Origin: Fonticula alba ATCC 38817
Lineage: Eukaryota > Protista > Nucleariida
Length of the DNA stretch: 62,036 bases
Direction: 5' to 3' (one strand)
Assembly (NCBI GenBank): GCA_000388065.2
Contig: KB932201.1
Shown here in pieces: positions 18,577-33,299 of this stretch; the stretch's first letter is position 1; every line of letters starts with the position of its first letter. Under the pieces are notes generated by a model that was given only the letters and a program-made list of their open reading frames with translations, made no database searches and had not been told where the DNA came from. The position numbers and the translations under genes were made by a program.

Positions 18577-21500
18577 CTAGCCCTCGGCCGGGGCATACTT
18601 GCCAAGCACGGCAAGGATGTCGGCCAGCAAACCCGGCAGGGAGGGCGACTTGTCCTCGCCAATGCGCAGGCGCTTGCGCCGGGGCAATTCATCGGCCGGC
18701 GAGCCCGAATCGGGTGGTGTGAATGTGAAGTCCGATCCCGGGGCCTCGGCCGCGGGATCTGGGTGAGGGCGCTTGGGTGCCAGGCGACCAGGCCGACCGG
18801 GGCCCGGCAGGTCGCGGGCCACCAACAGCACCTGACGGATCAGACCTCGGAGCAACTGCTCCCCGGGATCACCGGGTGATGCTGCCTGGGGGGAGGCCGA
18901 AGCATCGCCCGGGGTCGAGGCGGGGACCGCGGCAGCCATGTCCAACTGTCGGCGGGACTCGGCGGCCGCCGCAGCTACATGGGCCGCCGACCAGGGGGAG
19001 CCCGGAGCCTGACCGGTGGTGCCGGTGGCGGCCGCCGCCGCCGCCGCCAGAGCCTCGAGGGCCCGGACCGCCGGGACCCTTGTCGAATCGGCCACCGCCA
19101 GCCGGGCCAGCACAGCAGGCAGACGATGGAGGTGCATCGGGTCGGCCGAGTCGCCCAAGAGCGTCAAGTGGCCAGCCGCCACGCCCATCAGGAGATCCGT
19201 CAGGGCCGGTAGAAGGAGACCCGGCTCCGGGCCATCGGCTGCCAGCGCCGCGGCAAGTGGCCCCACCAGGTCTCGCCCAACGGCCAAGGGCCCGGCCGAG
19301 GCCGCGCCACCCTTCGGCCAAGTGGCCAGCACCATGCGCAGACACGCCAGCCCGAGGGCCAGCCGTCCAAGCTGCGCCGGACCCCCGGCGGGCGCTTCGG
19401 CCAGGGCCAGTCGAACGGCCTCGGCCACGGGACCCCAGGCACCGGGGCCTTCCTTCGGAGCAAAGCCCACCAACAGGTGCTCCAAGCGACCAAGGACCCC
19501 GAGTGCCGACGAGGGCGAGCCAGGTGCGACAGGTGGAGCGGCCAATTCGGCCGCCGCCAGCAATGCCTCGGCCACCGGCGTGGGTGGGCCGTTTGGCGGT
19601 CGGCTCCCGGCCGACAGCAAGGCCGCCTGACTTCGGAGGAAGGCCCAGTAACCGGCCATTGTGACGGAGGTGGTCCGGTACTGGACGGCCCGGAGCCCGG
19701 CCAATTGGGTCAGATGCCCGGCCAACAGTGTGCCCACTGGGCCTGGAGGATCGGCCACCAGGGCTCGGCGACAGGAAACCCAAATGCCCGCGGCCAGGCG
19801 GGACACCGCACACCGAGACACGCATGCCGGGAGGCTGTCCAGTGTCCTGGGCGCCGGGAGGACAGCCCGCCAGAGAGTCTGGCAGAAGGCCAGCACACCG
19901 GCAAGCCCGCCGATCTCACCGGCGCGGAAGCCGATGACCACCATGGCCTCGGCCAAGCGCTGGCCAAGAGAACCGGCCTCCGGGCCATCCGACGAGGAGC
20001 GGAGCAGCCGACGAAAGAGCCGCTCATCGGCCTGGTGCATTTGCCGGGCCAGGCCGAGGATCCGGCCGAGGAGGACATGCTCCATCCCCTCGGGCCCGGG
20101 GGCGGTGGCAGTCAGCGGCAGCGCGGATTTCGGACCCGGCGACTGCAGGGCCAGGCCGAGGGTCAGATCGAGGGCCTGAAGCAGGCACAGGCCGGAGACC
20201 GGGCCAATCGGCAACAGGGCATTCAGATGCCGGGCCAGCGCCAGACCCCCGGAGGCCGATGCCCTGGAACACTCGGTCGCCGGGGAGAGGAGCTCGCGAA
20301 GGAAGCCCGGCAGCCAGCGCCCGAAGACAAGCAACTCGGCCAGCACGCGCTCCTCCCACAGGAGCTGTGCATGTGCGGCCGCATGCAGGCAGAAACCGTC
20401 CGACGAGCAGGCAGGTACCGAAGGCGGAGGAACGGAAGCGTCCGGGGCCGGGGCCGGGGCCGGGGCCGCCGAGGACAGCGCCTCGCAGGGCAGGGCCCCG
20501 GCCAGGGGCAGGACCCAGCAAATGGGTGCCGCTCGAGCCAGGCGGCCAAAGTGTCCCATCACCTCGGCCTCCGGTGGGAGGAGGTCGACCACGAGGGCAG
20601 CGATGCCCGAGGGCCGGCGGGCCCGTCGAGCCAGTGCAAGCAACTCCGCGCCCAATTGCCGGAGCATGGCCAGGGCTCGGAGGAAATTGGCTTGCTGGCG
20701 GGCGGCCGGCCGGAAGGGACCCGAGTCGGTCGGGGACCCATCACACCCGAGCAGCCCCTTGGACGCCCTCTCCAGGAGAAGAGTCGCCGGCTGGAGATAA
20801 TGCAGCAGGGTGGACCAGAGGCGATCGAGCAGGGCCCCGAGCAGATGCTCCGCCGCGGCGTCGGTGGCCGCATCCGGCACCCGACCGCCCGCCCGCCAGG
20901 CATCCAGACCGGCCAGCAGGAGCCCGGGAGTCTGCCACAGGAGCCCGGCCGAGGCCGGGTCTTTTTGGAAGAACCCGGCAGCGCGCTCGACAAAACCCAT
21001 CAGCCCGAGGCACAATCCAGCAGGGAATGCAGGCGCCGCACCACCGGGGAGGAGGCCGGCCAACAGGGCGTCCAGCATCCGGGAGCCCCGGGACAGGGCC
21101 GGATCGGGGGCCCGGTCGGCCATGAGGACCGTGCACTGGGCCACGTAGGCAGACCATGCGCCGAAAGCCTCGAGGCACTTTTGCAGCAGGCGATTCGAGT
21201 GGGCCATCAGCTGGATGACCGCCGGGGAGGGCCGGCCGGGAGCGGCAGCCAGGCCGGCCAAGGCCTGCTCCACCGCCCGGCGCAAATGCAACGCAGCCAG
21301 GCCTTGACACATGGCCACGGCATTGCCAACCCGCGCCAGGAGGGGGCCTGGCACATCCGGGGCATCTGGCGCCGGGAGCACGGTCGACAGGCCTTCGATG
21401 GTCAGCTGAAAGTGCCCGGTGCAGAGAAGCATGGCCACCGAGGGCCCATGCAGGCTGGGGCCTTCAAAGAGGTCGCCATGGCTGTTGCCGCACTGCAGCG

Positions 21501-22245
21501 CCGAACTCTCAAGGAGGCTTGCAAAGAGCGAGAGGCAGGCTGCGCGAAAGCTGTGATGCCTCAGTCAGTAAAGTGAGGAGAGGAGGAGGGAGAAGGGGCG
21601 GGTGGGGGGGNNNNNNNNNNNNNNNNNNNNNNNNNNNNNNNNNNNNNNNNNNNNNNNNNNNNNNNNNNNNNNNNNNNNNNNNNNNNNNNNNNNNNNNNNN
21701 NNNNNNNNNNNNNNNNNNNNNNNNNNNNNNNNNNNNNNNNNNNNNNNNNNNNNNNGGGGGGGGGGGGGGGGAAGGAGGGGGAAGGAGGCAGACAGGTGCA
21801 AAGAGACAGAGAGAGAGAGAGAGAGAAGGAGGGGGAAAAAGCCGGGGACCACGCACCGATCGGACAGACTACTCAACAGCAGGAGCGCACGAGCAACCAC
21901 CGAGAAAAGCCCCACCCAGTCGGCATGCTCCAGGGAGGGGGCCGGCGTCTGGGAAACCACGGCCTCGACCTCTGCCTGGAGGAGAGCCGGCAAACGGGCC
22001 GGATCCCCGACCAGCCGATCCGCCAGGTCAGATAGCCAGGCCAAGGCCAGATCCTCGGCCTGGGAGTCCAGGCCGGGGGGTGCTTTGATGTCCAGCGACT
22101 GCGAGGAGGCCGGGCTGCCACCGGCAGCGAGGGCCACCAGCAGGGCCTCCCCACTGCGCAGATGCGCCAGGATATCCGCGCCATCGGCTGGCGACCGCGG
22201 GTCGATCTCCTCAAGAGCACTTAAAATCAGGGCCACAATGCTCAT
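18577..22245 (-). CDS. Uncharacterised ~1120-aa Leu/Ala-rich helical (alpha-solenoid-like) protein with C-terminal NLS-like PRRKRLR
   Basis: Exon 22245-21857 (donor GTGCGT) joins in frame to exon 21550-18577 (branch TACTGAC, acceptor CACAG), giving an open frame of about 3.36 kb. An N-gap lies inside the intron. An acceptor just upstream of the ATG allows a further 5' exon. No family recognised with confidence. Confidence 0.75.
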
Positions 22246-22732: not shown

Positions 22733-23201
22733 TCAATCGTGCTGGTGGATCTGCCAGCGGAAGGGGCAGGAGGGGCGGTCAGCGATGGTTCTATGGTTGG
22801 AGAATGTGCGACTCTTGACCCACGATTGGGCCGGGCGAATGCGCTTGCCGGTGGCCTTGAAAAGTACCTGTGCCTCGGTCTCGAGCCAGGCGCCCAAGTG
22901 GCCGAGTGACTGTGGGTCCAAGGACCAGGCACCATCGGGATGCGTGCCCTCGCCGCCGGGGGTGCCCGGCCCATCTGGGGCCAGCCCGCTGGGAACTGCG
23001 GGGTGCCCCTCGGGGAGCGGAGTCACCAGGACGTCCGGCATCGCGGTGTCCAGGTGCCACACGCGTAGACTGTCGGCCAAGTGGTCCACCTGCAGAGTGA
23101 CCGGGGTCGAGTCCGCGGCCTCGCTGGGATCGACGGCATCGCGGCGAATGGACGCCACTAGGTTGGTGCATGGGCGCGCGCGTGCGTGCGTGCGTGCGTG
23201 C

Positions 23202-23266
<65 letters not shown>

Positions 23267-24052
23267 TGCGTGCGTGTGTGCGTGCGTGCGTGCGTACGTG
23301 CGTGCGTGCGTGCGTGCGTGTGGGAGTGGGGGCATGGGGTCCCGCGGGGGAGACGGAGAAAGAAGGCCGGCGGAGGGACATGCCTCTTTGAAGTCAGCAA
23401 GGCAGGGCCCCACCAGGCGAAGAGGGAAATACCAAGGGCCAGGTGCGGAGGAGCAGTCAGTGCCACCGGGCAGATGCGCACCGAAGGCAAGTGGCCGAAG
23501 GCCGATTGTGGTGGATCGCAATCGCCGACCGCGCAGATAGATCTCCTGCTCGGGCAGGACCCCGGGTCCGGAGGAGGGGGCAGCCGGGGGGGCCTCCTCG
23601 GCCTGGCCGTCAGCGGCGGCCACGGCCGGGATGGCCAGCGCTGGGCCGGCCAGCTCGGCCGAGAAGTCGGCACCAGGCCCGAAGAGCGGATCAGCCACGC
23701 CGGCCCCGCCGGCGCCGCCCAGCGAACGAGGGAAAAGACGCGTGGCCTTTCGGGCGCCAGGCCCCCGGCGTCCGCTCGGCCCTGGCGATGCCCCGCCCAG
23801 GGGAACATACTGCGGGCGAGTCCACGGCCGGAAGAGCCCCGCATCGCCGGGCAGGGTCACGGCCGAGGCCAGTCGGAAGGGCAACACATCGACAGGGGCC
23901 AAGTGCGGATCGTGGCCAGAGCCCGGGCCGGCCGGGGGGCTGGGCGGCGGCGGCGGCGGCGACGGCGGCGGCGGCGGCGATCCCCCACCTAGAGATACCG
24001 GGCGCCGGAGGAGGAGCCGTCTCTCGCTGGACCGCGGGCCATCACCGGTCAT
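22733..24052 (-). CDS. RNASEH2C: Ribonuclease H2 subunit C (Rnh203)-like protein with low-complexity insertions
   Basis: Four ordered blocks match RNASEH2C: VDVLPFRL (HLLPCEV), [16 protein letters not shown] (EVSFRGRCLRGEEVAV), [13 protein letters not shown] (SRFTLWGLETIP) and [12 protein letters not shown] (ALTWPSLAAAI). Predicted intron 23481-23158 (GTGCGC..CTAG, phase 1). Confidence 0.65.
23175..23320. repeat. Compound (GC)n/(GCGT)n/(GT)n microsatellite in the RNASEH2C intron
   Basis: Directly visible alternating purine-pyrimidine tract of about 145 bp. Confidence 0.95.
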
Positions 24053-24789
24053 GCGCGCTTGCCGATCGCCGTGCTGGGGCCTTGTCAGAGAGAGGGAGAG
24101 GGAGGGAGAGAAGGAGGCAGGGAGGGGGCTCCGCGACAGAGAAACAACACCAGGGGCTCTGGCTGGGGGGGGGGGGGGGGCACCCACAAGGGAGGAGCTG
24201 GCTCGGCGGTGGATGGTGGGGCGGGAGGGGAAAGAGGGCCGGCGACCGAGGGCCGAGCGCGATGCAGGACAGGAGCAAGGGATCTGGGCAGAGGGGACGG
24301 GAGTACGGTCGTGGAGCTCCGCGGCCGCGAGGGCAACACCTGGCTATGAAAAATGCTCCCCCCCCCCCCCCCTGCCCCCTGGGCATCGCCAGGAGGGGCA
24401 GAGGGCCGGGAGACGGGCACCGGCGCCTGCCTACACCGGTACCAGGGTGGAAAAATGTTGGCTCGAGCCTGGACCTGCCAACTCATGGGCCGGCGTTAGG
24501 CACGTCGAAGCAACCGTCCTAGTTCGAGATCTCTCTGTCCGCGGGGGGGGGGGGGGCGAAGGGGCGCACCCAGCTTCGCCAGGCCGTTGCAATCGACCAG
24601 TGCACTTGTTGCGCACGTACGCCCAACGGCAGCAATATGAATGGGCCCGCGATGCCGGGCGTGGCGGCAGCCGCCCGCATCAGCCCCCTCCCCTGCCTCT
24701 CCTCCCCTTCCTTCCGGTTGCCAGCCTTCCTCCCCCTCCGCCTCCGTCCCCTGCCCCCCCCCCCTCCCCCCGATAGCGACGCAGCAGCC

Positions 24790-27168
24790 ATGTCGGGTGC
24801 GCCTTTCACGATCGCCTCCAGCACGCACTACCCATCGCCAGCTCACTCGGTCCCCCCCCCGCCCCCCCGCCGCAGCCCCTCCCCATCCTGGTAAGAACCT
24901 GTCCGTGCAGCAGGTCTGCGACATGGTCCACCACTTGAACATCAACCCGGAGTCGCTCCACCGCGCGGGCATCGACGGCGAGAAGCTTCTCGGTGTGCGT
25001 CGGCCTCCCCGCCGAAACTCCCCCTCTTTGGCGTCATGCTCATGGTGTCCGGCTTCCTCTCTCTCTCTCTCTCCTGACCCCTCCTCCCGCCCACCCTCCC
25101 CTCCGAAGATGAATCCCGACGTCCTGGTCCACGACTTCGGCTATGCCCCGCCCGAGGCCGATGCCATCCTGCGGACCTTCCACAACCCGGAGCACGAGCG
25201 CCGCGAGCGCCGCCCCATGCGCCCGCGCAATCCCGAGGGCCAGCAGCCCACTCGCGGCATTGTCCAGGGAACCGAGGAAGACGCCGACCAGGTGCGCCCA
25301 CAGATGTCCCTGCCGTGGTCTGGAACCGCTCCTGGGCCTTGGCCAGATGCCCAAGACCGGCAGCTCCGACGGGGATGGCAGGGGGAAGGGCAGCAGGATG
25401 CCGCTGCTTTTACTGACCAGCTCCCGACTGTCGCACAATGCCGGTAGCTTTTCGCCGACTCCGGCGACGCCTCGATCGCCAGCTTCCAGAACATGCCGGT
25501 CAACTGCACCGGCGAGAACATCCCGGCCCCGATCTCGGGCTTCGATCAGGCCGACTTCCCGGCGGGGCTCTACGAGAATGTCGTCCGGTCGCGGTACACC
25601 CAACCGTCGCCGGTCCAGGCGCATGCCATTCCGGTCATCGTGGCCGGTCGCGACCTGATGGCCTGTGCGCAAACCGGCTCCGGCAAGACCGCGGCCTTCC
25701 TCCTGCCGATTATCTCGCTCCTGATGAAGCAGGACCCCCTGCCGGCGCCGAAGGACCCCCGGTCGCGGGCCGTCCGCCCGCAGGCCATCGTTGTCTCGCC
25801 GACGCGCGAGCTGGCTTGCCAGATTTTCGACTCCTGCCGCAAGTACACCTACAAGACCCCGATTCGGCCGTGCGTCGTGTATGGCGGTGTGCATCATGAG
25901 CTTCAGATCGAGCAGATGACCAAGTACGGGGCCGACGTTCTGATTGCCACCCCCGGGCGTCTGCTTCATCTGCTGGAGACCCCGGGCCTGCTGGACATGT
26001 CCTTTGTCCGGTACGTCGAGCACGCCTGCTCATCCCTCCGCCTCTCCGGCGGCCGCCGCCCTCTTCAGCCTCCTTCAGCTCCTCGCCTTGAATCTTGCGC
26101 CCTCCTCTCTCCCGCCCTCCTCTCTCCCCCACCCCACCCTCTTTCTAATGGCCCATCTGCGCGTGATGCGGGACACATTGCTCCCCGCGTATCCGCGCCC
26201 CCCAAAGCTTCCTCGTGCTCGATGAGGCCGATCGGCTCCTGCACTTCGGCTTCGGCGACCAGGTCAACCAGCTGCTCAACTACCTGGACCCGGACTTTGT
26301 GCGAGTCATGATGTTCAGTGCCACCTTCCCGCCGGCCATCCAGCAATTGGCCCAGCGCATCCTCTCGCAGGATTACGTCTTCCTGAGCGTCGGCCGAGTC
26401 GGGTCCATGGCCTCCTCCATCGACCATGTGGTGGACTATGTCGAGGAGTCGGACAAGCATGCGGAGCTGGTCAACCACCTGCGTGACCTGCCGCCCAACC
26501 ACCTGGTCATCGTCTTTGTGCAGACTCGCATCCAATCCGACTCGCTGATGAACTACCTCCTTCAGCTGGGCTTCCCCACCACCACCCTGCATGCGGACAT
26601 GAGCCAGTACCACCGGGAGTACGAGCTGAATGAGTTCCTCACCCGGCGCAAGAGCATCCTCGTGGCCACCGATGTGGCCTCCCGCGGCTTGGACATCCCC
26701 AATGTGACGACCGTCATCAACTTCGACATGCCGGCCACCATCGACGATTACACCCACCGGGTGGGCCGTACCGGGCGCGTTGGCCGCAAGGGCCTGGCCA
26801 TCAGCTTCTTCAATGACGCCGACACGGCCCTGGCCGGGCCGCTGCTGGATGCCCTGATGGAGGTGGGCGCCCCGATCCCCGAGTGGCTCGAGGCCTTGGC
26901 CCTGGAGAACCGTGGCCACGGCGGCCAGTCCCGCTACCGTCGGGGCGGCAACCACCACATTGATCGGGACATCCGTGGCCCGGCGGCCAGTGGCGGCGGC
27001 GGTGCCGCCCCCCGGGCCGGTGGCGCTGGCGTCTCCCACCAGATGCCCGCCGCCTCGGCCCCGGCCGCCTCCGGGTCTTCCGCTCAGGCCGCCCCTGTGT
27101 CGGCCACTCCCGCCACTTACGAGTCGATGAACCGGAGTCAGGAGACCTACTCCTCCTGGGACATTTGA
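24790..27168 (+). CDS. DEAD-box RNA helicase of the DDX3/Ded1/Vasa clade with N-terminal SAM-like domain (~610 aa, 5 exons)
   Basis: Exons 24790-24796, 24876-24994, 25109-25291, 25448-26010 and 26208-27168 keep frame with GT-AG ends. Motifs: Q (YTQPSPVQ), I (AQTGSGKT), Ia (SPTRELACQI), GG, Ib (TPGRL), II (DEAD), III (SAT), V (TDVASRGLDIP) and VI (HRVGRTGRVG). Clade signatures are QLFADSG..FQNMPVNCTGENIP, GRDLMACAQTGSGKTAAFLLPI, YVFLSVGRVGS and a terminal Trp (SSWDI). Confidence 0.95.
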
Positions 27169-27928
27169 GTGGCTTTGCCTTTTCTGCCCCTTCTTGGCTC
27201 CCCCTCCCTCGGCGAGCGCCCTCGGGCGCCCCATGCTCGCGCATAGCCGCGCTCATGTGCTTGTCCAGCCCTCCCGGCTGTTGGCTATACGAGATTCCCC
27301 AACACCCCATGCAGCAATACACACGGCACATGCATTCTCCATGCGATTCTTCGGACGACGGGCGAGTCGGTCGAGTGCACCGGCTTTCATCATGGCCCCT
27401 GCTGCCTGAAAGTGAGAGGCGGGGGAATGACCAGGCACAGGCCTGCCTGCCTGTTCGCTGCGGCCTTTGCCTTGCTCGGTGGCGGCGGAGCCGGCAAAGG
27501 GGCGCAATCCGGCAACCGGGCACCAGTCAGGGGTGGCCAACAATGTGCCTTTTGTGTCACGTGCACGTCAGGCGTGACGTACTCTGCGCATTTTCAGGAT
27601 CCCCCTCGGCCCGCGAGGTGTGGCCCACCACGGTACCGGACCGGACCGGACGACACGGTGGCCGGCCAACGAAGAGGGGCGGACAATGCGGTGGCGATCC
27701 CTGTCCCCATCCCCTCCCATGCTGACACCCTGTGCTCGGGGCAGAGCCGGTCCTTGTTCCCCGCCCGGGAGGGGCGCCTCGGGGGTCGCGGGGCATTTTT
27801 CAGACACGCCGATTGCCCTCGCTCCGCCTCCGGAGGGACTGGCATCCGTACNNNNNNNNNNCCCCCCATCCGACAGATCCCGCCCCACCACCTCCCACCG
27901 CCGGCTCGTGAGACGACCAGAGAACGAG

Positions 27929-29073
27929 ATGACCAAGGGCAAACCCCAATCCTCCAGTGCGTCCGCTTTCCCTGCCTCCCAGCCTCGCTGGTGCCCTGAT
28001 CGGCCCCTCTGACCGCTCTCTCGCTTCCGGGACTCTGTGCTCCGCCCTCCCCCGCGCTCCCCCCCCCCCCTCCTCCCTGATCACCACCCGAAAGATCTTG
28101 AGGCCTTCTCCCAGGCTGTGTCCAACATCCTGGGCACGAAGACGCGCTCAGTCTCTGCGGTACGCGTTCAGCCGCATATATGGGGCTATACATACATATG
28201 ACTGCACCAAGACGCTGTCCCCGCCCCCCCCCCCCTTCCATTGTCTGACCTGTTTGTGAAACCCCCAGACCCCTGTCCTTTCGCAGTCTCGCCAGCTGGA
28301 CAAGGCCATCGAGAAGGAGCGCGCCGAGCGTCGGGCCCTTCTGAAGAAGCGTGCCGAGCGTCGGGCCGAGCGTCGTCGTGGCCATGTCCCGCCCCCTCGC
28401 TATGGCAGCGCCTCCAGCCGGTCTGCGGCTCTGGCCACCCAGTGGGACATCCCCTATGAGCGTCAGCTCCGTCGCGTGGCCACCAAGGGCGGTGCGTGGC
28501 CCTTGTGGCGCCTTTTCCGGGGCTTTGCCTTCTCTCCTGGTGGACATGCCTGTGAGACCCTCCGCTGACTCGGTCCTCCTTCTTCCCTTCCCCTTGCAAC
28601 CATGGATGCACTCATTTGTTGTTGGGGGCGGCTTGCTTTTTTCGCCCCCTTGCTCCTTCAGCGGTCCATCTTTTCAATGCCATCTCCAAGCACAAGGCCC
28701 AGGTCGAGGAGACCGTCGAGTCCGTCAAGACCTCCACCGAGAAGGAGAAGGGTACGTCGGCTTCTTGGGCGGTGGTCGGCTTTCACGGTGCTCCCAGGGC
28801 TTGCCATTGCCTTTCTCCCCCGCCTCCTCTCTTCGCCCGGCGCAGGAGAACCAAGCCTCACCCACCCTTTGCTCTTCCATTGCGCTGTCCCTCCCCCTCG
28901 CCTCGTCGCCCGCCGGGTCCACAGTCACCAAGCTGTCGAAGGACTCCTTCCTGGATTTGCTGAAGAATGTGGCCAAGGACAAGCCGGCTCCGGGCTCCCT
29001 TTCCAATGCTGCCAAGGCCCAGCTCGAGCTTCCCAAGGCCGGCTCCCTGTCCTTGCCTTCGCTCTGTGCGTGA
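27929..29073 (+). CDS. RRP15: Ribosomal RNA-processing protein 15
   Basis: Spliced YERQLRRVATKG|AVHLFNAISKHK matches the RRP15 core (ER.LRKIATRGVVQLFNAV.KHQ), followed by VTKLSKDSFLDLLK. Confidence 0.85.
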
Positions 29074-29444: not shown

Positions 29445-31589
29445 TCATTCGGAGTCGGAGCTCAGGTCATCCGAATCGTCGGAGTCCGAGTCGTCGTCAT
29501 CCGAGTCGTCATCGGAGCCATCATCCGATGGGCTGGCCTGCCCGGAGCCGGGAGCGGCAGTTCGGCGTGCGCCGGGCCGGGCATTCCGCGCGACGCCACT
29601 CGGCGGCGATGAAGTGCTAAGCTCACTGGCCACTACACGAAGACGGGCGAGCGTCACCCCCCGATCGGGAATCGCGCACAAGTGCCAGCACATGGACACA
29701 CGCACGCGCACGCACGCACGCACGCGCGCACAGACGTACACGCGCAATCGGGCAATTTGGTCAGACGGATGGGGGGAAAGCGCGAGGATCGACATGGATG
29801 GGAGAAGGTGGCGCACCCTTGACATGACTGTAAAAGGAGGAGGTGGACCCGATGGACCGGGGGACTGTCCGGGCAGGAGCCCGGCGGCCGGACATACGGC
29901 CCGAGTCGGATCCGCTCCCCCCGCTGCTGCCGAACTCCGCCGGGGTCAGGCAACCGGGCGTGGTGGGGGTTGTGGTGCCGCTGGATCCGGGCCCGCCGGC
30001 TCCACCAGCCCCGACCCCACCAACCGGTCCCCGAGCACCACCACCACCACCACCACCACCGACCGACTGGGCCCACGGAGAAGCCGTCAAGGTCGGCCGA
30101 GGGGGCGCAGCCACAGGCGCCACTGACCCTTGGACACTGGCAGACAGCGCGGGAGTCTGAGACTGCGGGCGGTGCTGCGCTTCGGACGGCGCATGAGGAG
30201 CCGAGCCGCTGGCACTACCGACAGCGATGGAGAGTGGACCGGGATTGGGGCCGGCATTCGGGCCGGAGTTCAGACTGGCGCCGGCCGGGCTGGCACGGAC
30301 GGGGCTCATCCCTCGGCCAGCGGGCGATCGGGCGGATGACGGCGATGGCGACGGCGAGGAGGAGAGCCAGTCATCGGAGTCCGGGGAGAACCCCACCGCC
30401 GGGGCCGCCGGCGAGGTGGGCTCCGCCTCTGCCCGAGTGGAGGCAACGGCGGGCGAGGCGACCGGCCGCATCGGGGGCGTGGTGGAGGAGGCAACATGCG
30501 GGGACGTTTGTGAGAAGCGCGAGCGCTTCTCCGCCGGAGGTCTCCCCCGGTCGCTGGCTGGCGGGCGCTTGCCATCGATCACGCTTGGGGATGAGGTCGG
30601 AGCCGGGGCCGGGGCGTGGCCAGCTTGCGAGCGGCCGGCTTCCTCGTCATCGTCATCGGTGCACGAGGAAAAGGCACCGGCTCCCGGGCCGGCATCATCA
30701 TCGTCACTGGAGAAGGCCCCAGCCGCCGAGGAGGAGCGCCGGCCTTGGGAAGCTTGCTGAGAAGACAGCGAGGCTTGAGTCGAACGCCGGGACGCCGGCT
30801 GCTTGGCCAGACCCTGGGCAGGCAAGCTGCTGAAGGGCCCCTGCCGGGAGGACGTCATTCGGAAGCGGGAGCCAATGCGCTCCAGCACCAGGGACTACGA
30901 ATGGACAGGGGGAGGGGGGGGGCACATGAACAGCGGACGCGGTCAGTAAGTCACGCGAAAGGCCGAGTGCAAGACAGAGCCCCGGACCCGGAGCCTACCT
31001 GGGTCTTTTCGTCGTAGACGAAGAGGCACTCGTAGCGCGGCCCACCGCCGCCGTGCGGGTCATCCGGGGCCGGGGGGCATTGGGGGCCATCAAAGAGGTG
31101 GTTTTTTTGATGAGCCTGCTGTCCCCGAGGGCATCATGAGGGGGGAAGCAGTGTGAGGGCACGGAGCAGGGGAAGGAAAAGGAGGAAAAACAGCCTTGCA
31201 AAGACACCGCGGACGCACCTCATCCGGGGCAGTGCCGCGAAGGGTCGACGGAAACTGCAGGTGCCAGTCGGAGCTGTCACCGGTGGCGGGACGCAGCCGG
31301 CCAGCTTGGGTTGCATCCACGGTTTGCGGGATCTGATTGACTGGGGAGGGGGGGGGGGGGGAGGTACGGGATTAGGAGGGGAGAAGGGAGCGGGGTGCGG
31401 ATTACTCGCGAGGGGGAAGGAGAAATGAGGAGACGCACACTCGAACAGGTGCAATGTCGGACTATCGACGCTGCTGTAAGATTCGATGCTCGTGAGGGAC
31501 TTCGTGTCGCCGGTTAGCTGGCCGTCCAGGAGGGACCGGCCAACTGACAGCTGGAAGGAGGAGAAGGTGTGGTTGCCCCGGGAGGCCAT
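29445..31589 (-). CDS. EAF1: ELL-associated factor (EAF) family protein
   Basis: Spliced FQLSVGRSL..TLHLFE|FNQIPQTVDATQAGRL..|HLFDGPQ..YECLFVYDEKTQ|SLVLERIGSRFRM matches the EAF domain (LRLGESF..FHTIRYDFKPASID..GEL..FKG..DCVLIINHDTGEYVLEKL). It is followed by a Ser/Pro-rich region and the acidic end DDSDDLSSDSE typical of EAFs. Confidence 0.75.
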
Positions 31590-32451: not shown

Positions 32452-33299
32452 CTAGACCTCATCCTCATCGAGGAGCATGTTGGGGATGGACTTGACAATC
32501 GGGAAGACACGGCCAGACTCCGGGCAGGTGAGAGACCCCTCGACAACGTCGAGCTAATTTTTCGAAGCCCGAGATCAAGGGGGCGAGGCGAGGAAAGCGC
32601 ATCATCAAGTGTCAATTGCCAAGGGGGAAATCCGTGCGAGAGGACAGGGGCCGGGCCTGAACAGGGCCCCCGACAAGGGGGGAAAAAAAAAACACCGAAC
32701 ACCGCGACGCACATAGAAGAGGATACGGTAAATGGTCTTGCGCTCCTGCTCGGTGAGGGAAGCCAGATCGGGGTTCGAGCTGGAAGCCACGGTGGCCGCA
32801 TCGACGCCCATCGAGGGGCTCACGGCGACCTTCGGGGGGGGAAGGCCCTCAGCGTGGCCAAGCTGCGGGTGGTGCACACGCCACCAGGGGGTGAGGGAGG
32901 GCGAGGGGGAGGTCTCGCACGTCAATGGGAAGGGGCGGGAAAAAAACAGGGGGGGCCGGCGGCTCGAGAGGGAGAGAGAGAGAGAGAGAGAGAGGAAGGA
33001 AGAGAAAACCAGGGTAACGGGAGGAAAACAACGAGGGAAGTCCCACGCACAGCAGAGGCAGCCTGGTGCAGGACCGAGTAGACGACCTTGGGCCAGATGT
33101 TGGCCATGACATCGTCATTGTACTCCGGCAGGCCGTACTCGCCATCACTGGCGTCCGAGTCCTCGGCCATCTGCTCGGCGATGGCCTTCTCGGCCACTTC
33201 GTCAAGGAAGCGCACCTCGGTGGCGGCAAGCCCGAGCGGGTAGCCGTTCTTGACGCCACGCACGTGGGAGCACATCAGGTTGTGGGCGAGCAGACGCAT
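32452..33299 (-). CDS. TRM112: Multifunctional methyltransferase activator TRM112
   Basis: Exons 33299-33051, 32862-32713 and 32553-32452: [30 protein letters not shown]...[33 protein letters not shown]. Confidence 0.93.

What the first reader, a model, noticed from the sequence alone, without database searches (positions are those of the whole stretch)
24790..25291. SAM-like domain fused to a DDX3/Ded1/Vasa-clade DEAD-box helicase
Seen: splicing exons 24790-24796, 24876-24994 and 25109-25291 gives MSAPPHPGKNLSVQQVCDMVHHLNINPESLHRAGIDGEKLLGMNPDVLVHDFGYAPPEADAILRTF. This follows the sterile-alpha-motif pattern (SVxxVxxxL..IDGxxLLxL..L..xG....xIL). It replaces the RGG-rich disordered N-terminus and eIF4E-binding motif of Ded1/DDX3/Vasa, while all catalytic motifs and the Vasa-like terminal Trp (SSWDI) are intact. 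Knowledge: SAM domains polymerise or bind RNA hairpins (Smaug/Vts1), and DDX3/Vasa drive RNP granules. Inference: a helicase whose granule assembly or target selection uses SAM; I know of no described SAM-DDX3 fusion. The ORF track misses it because the domain is split by two introns.
Basis: partly seen in the sequence, partly recalled or inferred. Interest (0 to 1): 0.78.

Follow-up and report, generated by a model that had tools for sequence, protein, structure and literature searches.

The report
SAM-fold head on divergent DDX3-like helicase
The amoeba Fonticula alba expresses a fast-evolving relative of the translation helicase DDX3/Ded1 whose usual floppy front end is replaced by a small folded module that two structure predictors place in the SAM protein-docking fold, a combination not seen in any relative examined.

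Summary
The product equals the public protein H696_00194 of Fonticula alba, 610 aa, filed as hypothetical.

The helicase part is DDX3-like. DDX3X is the best solved match, all catalytic motifs are intact, and the family's S-x-W-D end is kept. It is strongly divergent: 44-46% identity, where true orthologues share 60-79%, and a very long tree branch.

Residues 9-70 give no Pfam SAM hit and have no sequence relative. Fold evidence points the other way:
- AlphaFold2 (pLDDT 77) and the ESM Atlas model both give a five-helix bundle.
- Its neighbours are almost all SAM domains. Foldseek ranks 1-46 are SAM or Pointed; VIA gives Z 9.7 to L3MBTL3 and 9.6 to PHC3.

The conserved YxPPHxR eIF4E motif and RGG repeats are absent from the front end. 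None of 99 relatives' N-termini carries SAM.

Function is inferred: most likely a protein-docking or self-association module. Verdict: a new variant of a known kind, of moderate interest. Whether Fonticula also has a conventional Ded1 gene could not be tested.

The parts
24775..24789 (+). Minimal 5' UTR seen in transcript contigs
   Evidence: Contig of run X3 starts at 24775; X1 and X2 reach 18-20 nt before the first joint. There is no depth in 24621-24727.
24790..24796 (+). Exon 1, coding part (ATG TCG G; Met-Ser and first base of Ala3)
   Evidence: Joint 24796|24876 with GT..AG in three runs. Same start as the public CDS.
24876..24994 (+). Exon 2: residues 3-42, helices 1-3 of the SAM-like domain
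   Evidence: joints; translation equals P0001 residues 4-42; helices.
24995..25108 (+). Intron 2 (114 nt, in frame, no stop). It falls between helix 3 and helix 4 of the domain
   Evidence: Skipped in all four runs with GT..AG. The read-through translation has no stop.
25109..25291 (+). Exon 3: residues 43-103, helices 4-5 of the SAM-like domain (to about residue 70) and a 33-residue charged linker (71-103)
25448..26010 (+). Exon 4: residues 104-291; DDX3-type N-terminal extension, Q motif, motifs I, Ia, Ib
   Evidence: Pfam DEAD 6e-30; 100% match to P0001 residues 104-290; joints.
26208..27168 (+). Exon 5: motifs II-VI, Helicase_C, C-terminal extension, low-complexity G/A/S/P tail ending in SSWDI, stop TGA at 27166-27168
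   Evidence: Pfam Helicase_C 1e-28; tblastn 100% for residues 292-610; for the tail.
27169..27334 (+). 3' UTR as far as transcript contigs reach
   Evidence: Contigs end at 27330-27334.

Best explanation
Window 24790-27168 (+) is a five-exon, expressed gene of Fonticula alba (H696_00194). It encodes a 610-residue, catalytically intact but fast-evolving member of the DDX3/Ded1 family of DEAD-box RNA helicases.

Canonical members carry a disordered N-terminus with a YxPPHxR eIF4E-binding motif. This protein instead has:
- an orphan, acidic, about 62-residue five-helix domain of the SAM fold (residues 9-70), nearest in shape to the self-associating Ph/PHC3, Scm, L3MBTL3 and SAMD1 SAMs;
- a 33-residue charged linker (71-103);
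- the DDX3-type extension-core-extension (104-535);
- a low-complexity tail ending in the family's S-x-W-D motif.

Shown: the gene model, its expression, the helicase family, the absence of the eIF4E motif, and the predicted fold.

Inferred: the SAM-like head is a protein-protein docking module. It would act by self-association or by binding another SAM protein, raising the local concentration of the helicase or placing it in a complex. A folded interaction domain would thereby stand in for the disordered N-terminus that in yeast Ded1p contributes to oligomerisation and eIF4A binding (PMC4990422).

The strong divergence of the core suggests a specialised paralogue rather than the housekeeping Ded1. 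That point could not be tested.
For: Gene model and expression:
- Splicing and expression.
- Identity with the public protein and locus.

Helicase family:
- Pfam DEAD 2.6e-44 and Helicase_C 6e-30.
- Best solved relatives: DDX3X 389.6 bits over residues 103-535, against Vasa 339 and Dbp2 296.
- The top 120 database hits are all DDX3/Ded1/plant RH37-52.
- The S-x-W-D end is shared with homologues.

Fold of the N-terminus:
- AF2 of residues 5-75: pLDDT 77.1, five helices. The same helices appear in the 1-110 model.
- Foldseek ranks 1-46 are all SAM or Pointed, TM 0.64-0.79, rmsd 1.4-2.5 A.
- VIA Z 9.7, 9.6 and 9.2 to L3MBTL3, PHC3 and SAMD1 SAMs over 63-67 of about 70 residues. The first HhH-type fold scores Z 7.1.
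- The independent ESM Atlas model matches SAM_1/SAM_2 clusters at TM 0.69-0.78 over residues 5-72.
- Language-model neighbours include four SAM-clan families.

Missing canonical features: no YxxxxL-phi motif or RGG in residues 1-103, while relatives' N-termini have a YVPPHxR consensus.

Divergence.
Against: - No Pfam SAM_1/SAM_2 hit at E<=10 on residues 1-75, 1-110 or the whole protein.
- phmmer against PDB sequences finds no SAM.
- The domain has no detectable sequence relative, so both structure models rest on one sequence.
- Four of the five AF2 models of residues 5-75 had pLDDT 49-60.
- Foldseek E-values are only 0.008 or worse, and VIA Z below about 13 can be a common helical arrangement, by the tool's own note.
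- Nothing here shows self-association, a partner, or any effect on helicase activity.
- With no orthologue there is no evidence of purifying selection on the domain.
Confidence: 0.55

Rival explanations
1. The SAM-like head is an RNA-binding SAM of the Smaug/Vts1 type. It would recognise hairpin RNAs and give the helicase target selectivity.
For: It has the same fold class as the RNA-binding SAMs, is fused to an RNA helicase, and a basic linker follows the domain.
Against: The domain is acidic (4 K+R against 9 D+E, pI 5.3), whereas an RNA-binding surface is expected to be basic (my knowledge of Vts1/Smaug). The nearest structures are protein-binding, polymer-type SAMs; no Smaug or Vts1 entry is among the 50 rows listed by either search.
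Confidence: 0.1
2. The domain belongs to the helix-hairpin-helix branch of the SAM-like fold (RAD51 N-terminal domain, NusA acidic repeat, ERCC1/XPF type). It would contact nucleic-acid duplexes or a partner in that manner.
For: RAD51-paralogue N-terminal domains score Z 6.6-7.1 with 16-21% identity. NusA clusters appear in the Atlas shape search. By eye the two hairpins (AGIDG, FGYAPP..A..IL) resemble HhH hairpins; this is a lead from memory only.
Against: With the better model, true SAM domains stand 2.5 Z units higher and fill Foldseek ranks 1-46. Language-model neighbours are SAM-clan families, none HhH. No Pfam HhH family matched. The domain is acidic.
Confidence: 0.1
3. The N-terminus is a lineage-specific orphan sequence without a stable or functional domain. 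The SAM-like models would be artefacts of single-sequence prediction on a short helical peptide.
For: There is no homologue and no Pfam hit. Small helical bundles easily find matches.
Against: Two different predictors converge on the same five helices and the same family of neighbours. Matches cover whole SAM domains end to end at rmsd 1.4-2.5 A, with one family nearly exclusive among the hits. The hydrophobic pattern follows the SAM layout without large gaps (direct reading).
Confidence: 0.12

Closest known systems
DDX3X / Ded1p / plant RH37-RH52 (DDX3 family of DEAD-box RNA helicases)
   Same: Best sequence match (389.6 bits to DDX3X, covering the N- and C-terminal extensions of the crystallised construct). 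All motifs Q, I, Ia, Ib, II, III, IV, V and VI are present. It has a low-complexity C tail ending in S-x-W-D.
   Different: Only 44-46% identical, where orthologues from plants, fungi and animals share 60-79%. 53 of 185 family-invariant positions are changed and the terminal branch is 4.27 against a median of 0.16. It lacks the N-terminal YxPPHxR eIF4E motif and has a folded SAM-like domain in place of a disordered N-terminus.
Polymer-type SAM domains of Polycomb-group proteins (Ph/PHC3, Scm, L3MBTL3, Sfmbt, SAMD1)
   Same: Nearest predicted-fold neighbours: Z 9.2-9.7, rmsd 1.6-2.3 A over 63-67 residues, TM 0.7-0.79.
   Different: 14-24% identity and no Pfam SAM hit. The context is entirely different (N-terminus of an RNA helicase). 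Head-to-tail polymerisation is not shown.
Vasa/DDX4
   Same: Sister family of DDX3 and second-best solved match (339 bits).
   Different: It scores lower than DDX3X. Vasa-type N-terminal zinc knuckles, seen in 4 of the 99 relatives, are absent here. The terminal Trp is not Vasa-specific.
DEAD-box helicases with accessory folded domains (DDX1 SPRY; Hera dimerisation domain plus RBD)
   Same: A conserved core is combined with an added interaction or oligomerisation domain (titles and abstracts of PMC4555926 and PMC11850223).
   Different: The added domain type and its position differ. No SAM example was found.

Membership tests
SAM / Pointed domain superfamily | Compact five-helix bundle of about 65-70 residues superposable on solved SAM domains | tested here: met
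   On predicted models only. AF2 pLDDT 77.1; Foldseek ranks 1-46 are SAM/PNT, TM up to 0.79; VIA Z 9.7/9.6/9.2; ESM Atlas model TM 0.69-0.78 to SAM clusters.
SAM / Pointed domain superfamily | Significant match to the sequence profiles SAM_1 (PF00536) or SAM_2 (PF07647) | tested here: not met
   No hit at E<=10 on residues 1-75, 1-110, the whole protein or the single exons. No SAM chain found by phmmer against PDB sequences. Profile-profile comparison (HHpred) could not be run.
SAM / Pointed domain superfamily | Self-association, hetero-SAM binding or RNA-hairpin binding | not testable with these tools
   This needs biochemistry or multimer modelling.
DDX3/Ded1 family | Complete DEAD-box core (Q, I, Ia, Ib, II, III, IV, V, VI) | tested here: met
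   Pfam DEAD 2.6e-44 and Helicase_C 6e-30. Motifs read directly: TQPSPVQ, AQTGSGKT, PTRELA, TPGRL, DEAD, SAT, ARGLD-type SRGLD, HRVGRTGR.
DDX3/Ded1 family | Closer to DDX3 than to any other DEAD-box subfamily, including the flanking extensions | tested here: met
   DDX3X 389.6 bits (residues 103-535) against Vasa 339, Dbp2 296, DDX46 265. Top 120 database hits are all DDX3/Ded1-type. No outgroup-rooted tree was made.
DDX3/Ded1 family | N-terminal eIF4E-binding motif YxPPHxR in a disordered N-terminus | tested here: not met
   There is no YxxxxL-phi in residues 1-103. The consensus of 99 relatives' N-termini contains YVPPHxR.
DDX3/Ded1 family | C-terminal tail ending in a Trp-containing S-x-W-D/W-type motif | tested here: met
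   The protein ends in YSSWDI. 174 of 262 fetched relatives have a Trp in the last 8 residues, typically SAWD or SSWD.
DDX3/Ded1 family | Orthologue-level conservation of the core | tested here: not met
   44-46% identity against 60-79% among orthologues from four kingdom-level groups; 29% of invariant columns changed; terminal branch about 25 times the median.

The most novel reading that the evidence does not exclude
A DDX3-derived helicase that assembles through a folded, polymer-type SAM domain instead of disordered low-complexity tails. This would be a structured route to helicase clustering or RNP-granule formation. It may be a specialised paralogue tied to the aggregative life cycle of Fonticula.
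Probability: 0.2. Interest if true: 0.65.

Novelty: new variant of a known kind. Interest (0 to 1): 0.45.

Why it matters
DDX3/Ded1 helicases are thought to work as oligomers and to enter RNA granules through their disordered tails. A natural family member in which the N-terminal tail is replaced by a folded SAM-type interaction module would allow a clean test: can defined, domain-mediated self-association or recruitment substitute for disorder-driven assembly?

The case also shows that fold prediction can reveal domain fusions that profile libraries miss. The public entry lists only DEAD and Helicase_C.

The value is limited by three things: it occurs in one species, the domain has no detectable relatives, and its function is untested.

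Tried and rejected
- **Pfam on single exons and on the in-frame read-through of intron 2.** No SAM hit. This was expected for a split domain and was repeated on the database protein.
- **phmmer against PDB sequences** with the read-through and with residues 1-80. Only chance hits.
- **Word-index searches for relatives of the N-terminus.** Tried as part of the whole protein and as a stand-alone piece. Only the protein itself, or nothing.
- **Literature searches** for SAM plus DEAD-box or DDX3, and for Fonticula plus DEAD-box. Nothing relevant.
- **Scan notes for a second DDX3/Ded1 gene in this genome.** No note. That says little.
- **A second copy in the window.** None; the other hits are low-complexity.
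- **A longer protein starting at the in-frame ATG at 24637.** Rejected: no transcript coverage at 24621-24727.
- **Retention of the in-frame intron 2.** Rejected: all contigs skip it.
- **A hand-joined exon model** was not submitted to any tool. The identical database protein P0001 was used instead.

Full report
**Observation**

The region lies in a eukaryotic window of about 67% G+C. Contigs of four public runs were laid on 24300-27500 (one study, two samples, 2012; labelled 'RNA?').
- One contig per run, of about 2 kb, skips four stretches with GT..AG ends. This gives exons ..24796, 24876-24994, 25109-25291, 25448-26010 and 26208-27168, with a 3' UTR to about 27330.
- Three assemblies include the 7-base coding part of exon 1 and begin at about 24775.
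- Nothing covers 24621-24727, so the in-frame ATG at 24637 is not used in these data.
- Intron 2 is 114 nt, in frame and free of stops, but every contig removes it.

A search with exon 4 by reference returned a 610-residue database protein, P0001. It is 100% identical to exon 4 over residues 104-290, and its N-terminus equals exons 2 and 3 translated by reference. I used that protein for all further work. It is NCBI H696_00194, 'hypothetical protein', of Fonticula alba. It is encoded on KB932201.1 of GCA_000388065.2 with the same start and stop as the window gene.

**The helicase**

Evidence that it is DDX3-like:
- Pfam finds DEAD (2.6e-44) and Helicase_C (6e-30) and nothing else.
- Against solved structures, DDX3X is best (389.6 bits, residues 103-535). 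That span includes the N- and C-terminal extensions of the crystallised DDX3X constructs. Vasa (339), Dbp2 (296) and DDX46 (265) follow.
- The 120 best database hits are all DDX3/Ded1/plant RH37-RH52 proteins at 44-49% identity. None has a SAM Pfam domain and none is a second Fonticula protein.
- All catalytic motifs are intact on direct reading.
- The protein ends in YSSWDI. Most fetched relatives end in SAWD or SSWD, so this is a DDX3-family feature, not a Vasa mark.

The core is nevertheless unusually divergent:
- It is 44-46% identical to DDX3 orthologues from plants, algae, fungi and a coral. Those share 60-79% with one another.
- 53 of 185 columns invariant among these orthologues are changed here.
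- In a maximum-likelihood tree of 22 family members its terminal branch is 4.27, against a median of 0.16. The tree has no outgroup, so its position is unresolved.

I read this as a fast-evolving, probably specialised member of the family. Whether Fonticula also has a conventional Ded1 could not be tested, because no tool gives access to the whole genome.

**The N-terminus**

Sequence methods see nothing:
- No Pfam SAM_1/SAM_2 match even at E<=10.
- No SAM chain by phmmer against PDB sequences.
- No relative of residues 1-103 among proteins of similar length, and none of residues 1-80 among short proteins.

Fold prediction is consistent and specific:
- AlphaFold2 without an alignment gave five helices (13-22, 27-33, 37-41, 45-51, 56-67). 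Mean pLDDT was 57.8 for residues 1-110.
- For residues 5-75 the best model had pLDDT 77.1 (82-85 in the core); the other four models scored 49-60.
- With the better model, Foldseek ranks 1-46 in the PDB are all SAM or Pointed domains. The best E-value is 8e-3, TM is 0.64-0.79 and rmsd 1.4-2.5 A. The first other fold, ERCC1-XPF, comes at rank 47.
- An exhaustive VIA-align search gives Z 9.7 (L3MBTL3 SAM), 9.6 (PHC3 SAM) and 9.2 (SAMD1 SAM). Fourteen SAM entries come before the first helix-hairpin-helix relative of the fold, a RAD51-paralogue N-terminal domain at Z 7.1.
- The ESM Atlas holds its own model of this protein, from a different predictor. Residues 5-72 of that model match clusters carrying SAM_1/SAM_2 (polyhomeotic-like, Scm, GAREM) at TM 0.69-0.78.
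- Language-model neighbours, although weak (0.77-0.81), include four SAM-clan families.

I conclude that residues 9-70 very probably form a SAM-type bundle (about 0.8) and more likely a true SAM than an HhH-type relative. Membership in the sequence family is not demonstrated.

**What is replaced**

- The aligned N-termini of 99 DDX3-like relatives have the consensus YVPPHxR, the eIF4E-binding motif.
- P0001 has no YxxxxL-phi and no RGG in residues 1-103.
- Pfam domains found in those 99 N-termini are zinc knuckles, CCCH fingers, WW, a cyclophilin and a RanBP zinc ribbon. SAM never appears.
- Shape-search neighbours in the Atlas include no cluster with DEAD.
- Literature searches found no SAM-DEAD-box fusion.

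These samples are limited, so 'not widespread' is supported but 'unique' is not proven.

**Mechanism (inferred)**

- The domain is acidic (4 K+R, 9 D+E, pI 5.3) and is followed by a charged linker with an Arg-rich start. This argues against Smaug/Vts1-like RNA-hairpin binding.
- Its nearest structural neighbours are SAMs that self-associate or pair with other SAMs.
- Yeast Ded1p unwinds as a trimer. Its N-terminus contributes to oligomerisation and binds eIF4A, and its C-terminus binds eIF4G (PMC4990422).
- The most economical reading is that the SAM-like head supplies a folded docking or self-association surface. That surface would concentrate or recruit this helicase, replacing the eIF4E/eIF4A-directed disordered N-terminus.
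- Loss of the eIF4E motif together with the accelerated core suggests a role shifted away from canonical cap-dependent initiation.

None of this is shown.

**Verdict**

This is a real, expressed gene. The architecture claim holds at the fold level. The function is unknown and only inferred. It is a new variant of a known kind and of moderate interest.

Noticed in passing
window 24995-25108: Intron 2 is 114 nt, in frame and without a stop. Retention would insert 38 Pro/Ser-rich residues between helices 3 and 4 of the SAM-like domain. No retained form was seen in the contigs.
   Followed up: partly
window 26325-26345: A different transcript contig of 2.5-2.9 kb in the same runs touches this 21-nt stretch (motif III region). 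It continues with sequence encoding DEADKLLSQ. By my memory of family motifs this is a Dhh1/DDX6-type helicase mRNA of the same organism (loose ends).
   Followed up: no
window 24360-24373, 24544-24557, 24750-24770: Long C and G homopolymer tracts lie just upstream of the gene. They attract unrelated contigs and may be why transcript assemblies stop at about 24775.
   Followed up: no
window 27853-27862: A run of 10 N (assembly gap) lies about 0.5 kb beyond the 3' UTR end.
   Followed up: no
window 22733-24052 (-) and 18577-22245 (-): Two annotated upstream genes (292 and 1109 aa) have no Pfam family on record. The first ORF contains a CA-repeat-encoded Thr-His run.
   Followed up: no
window 27929-29073 (+), 29445-31589 (-), 32452-33299 (-): The annotated neighbours are Rrp15p, EAF and a weak Trm112p match. 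This is ordinary housekeeping context with no obvious link to the helicase.
   Followed up: no
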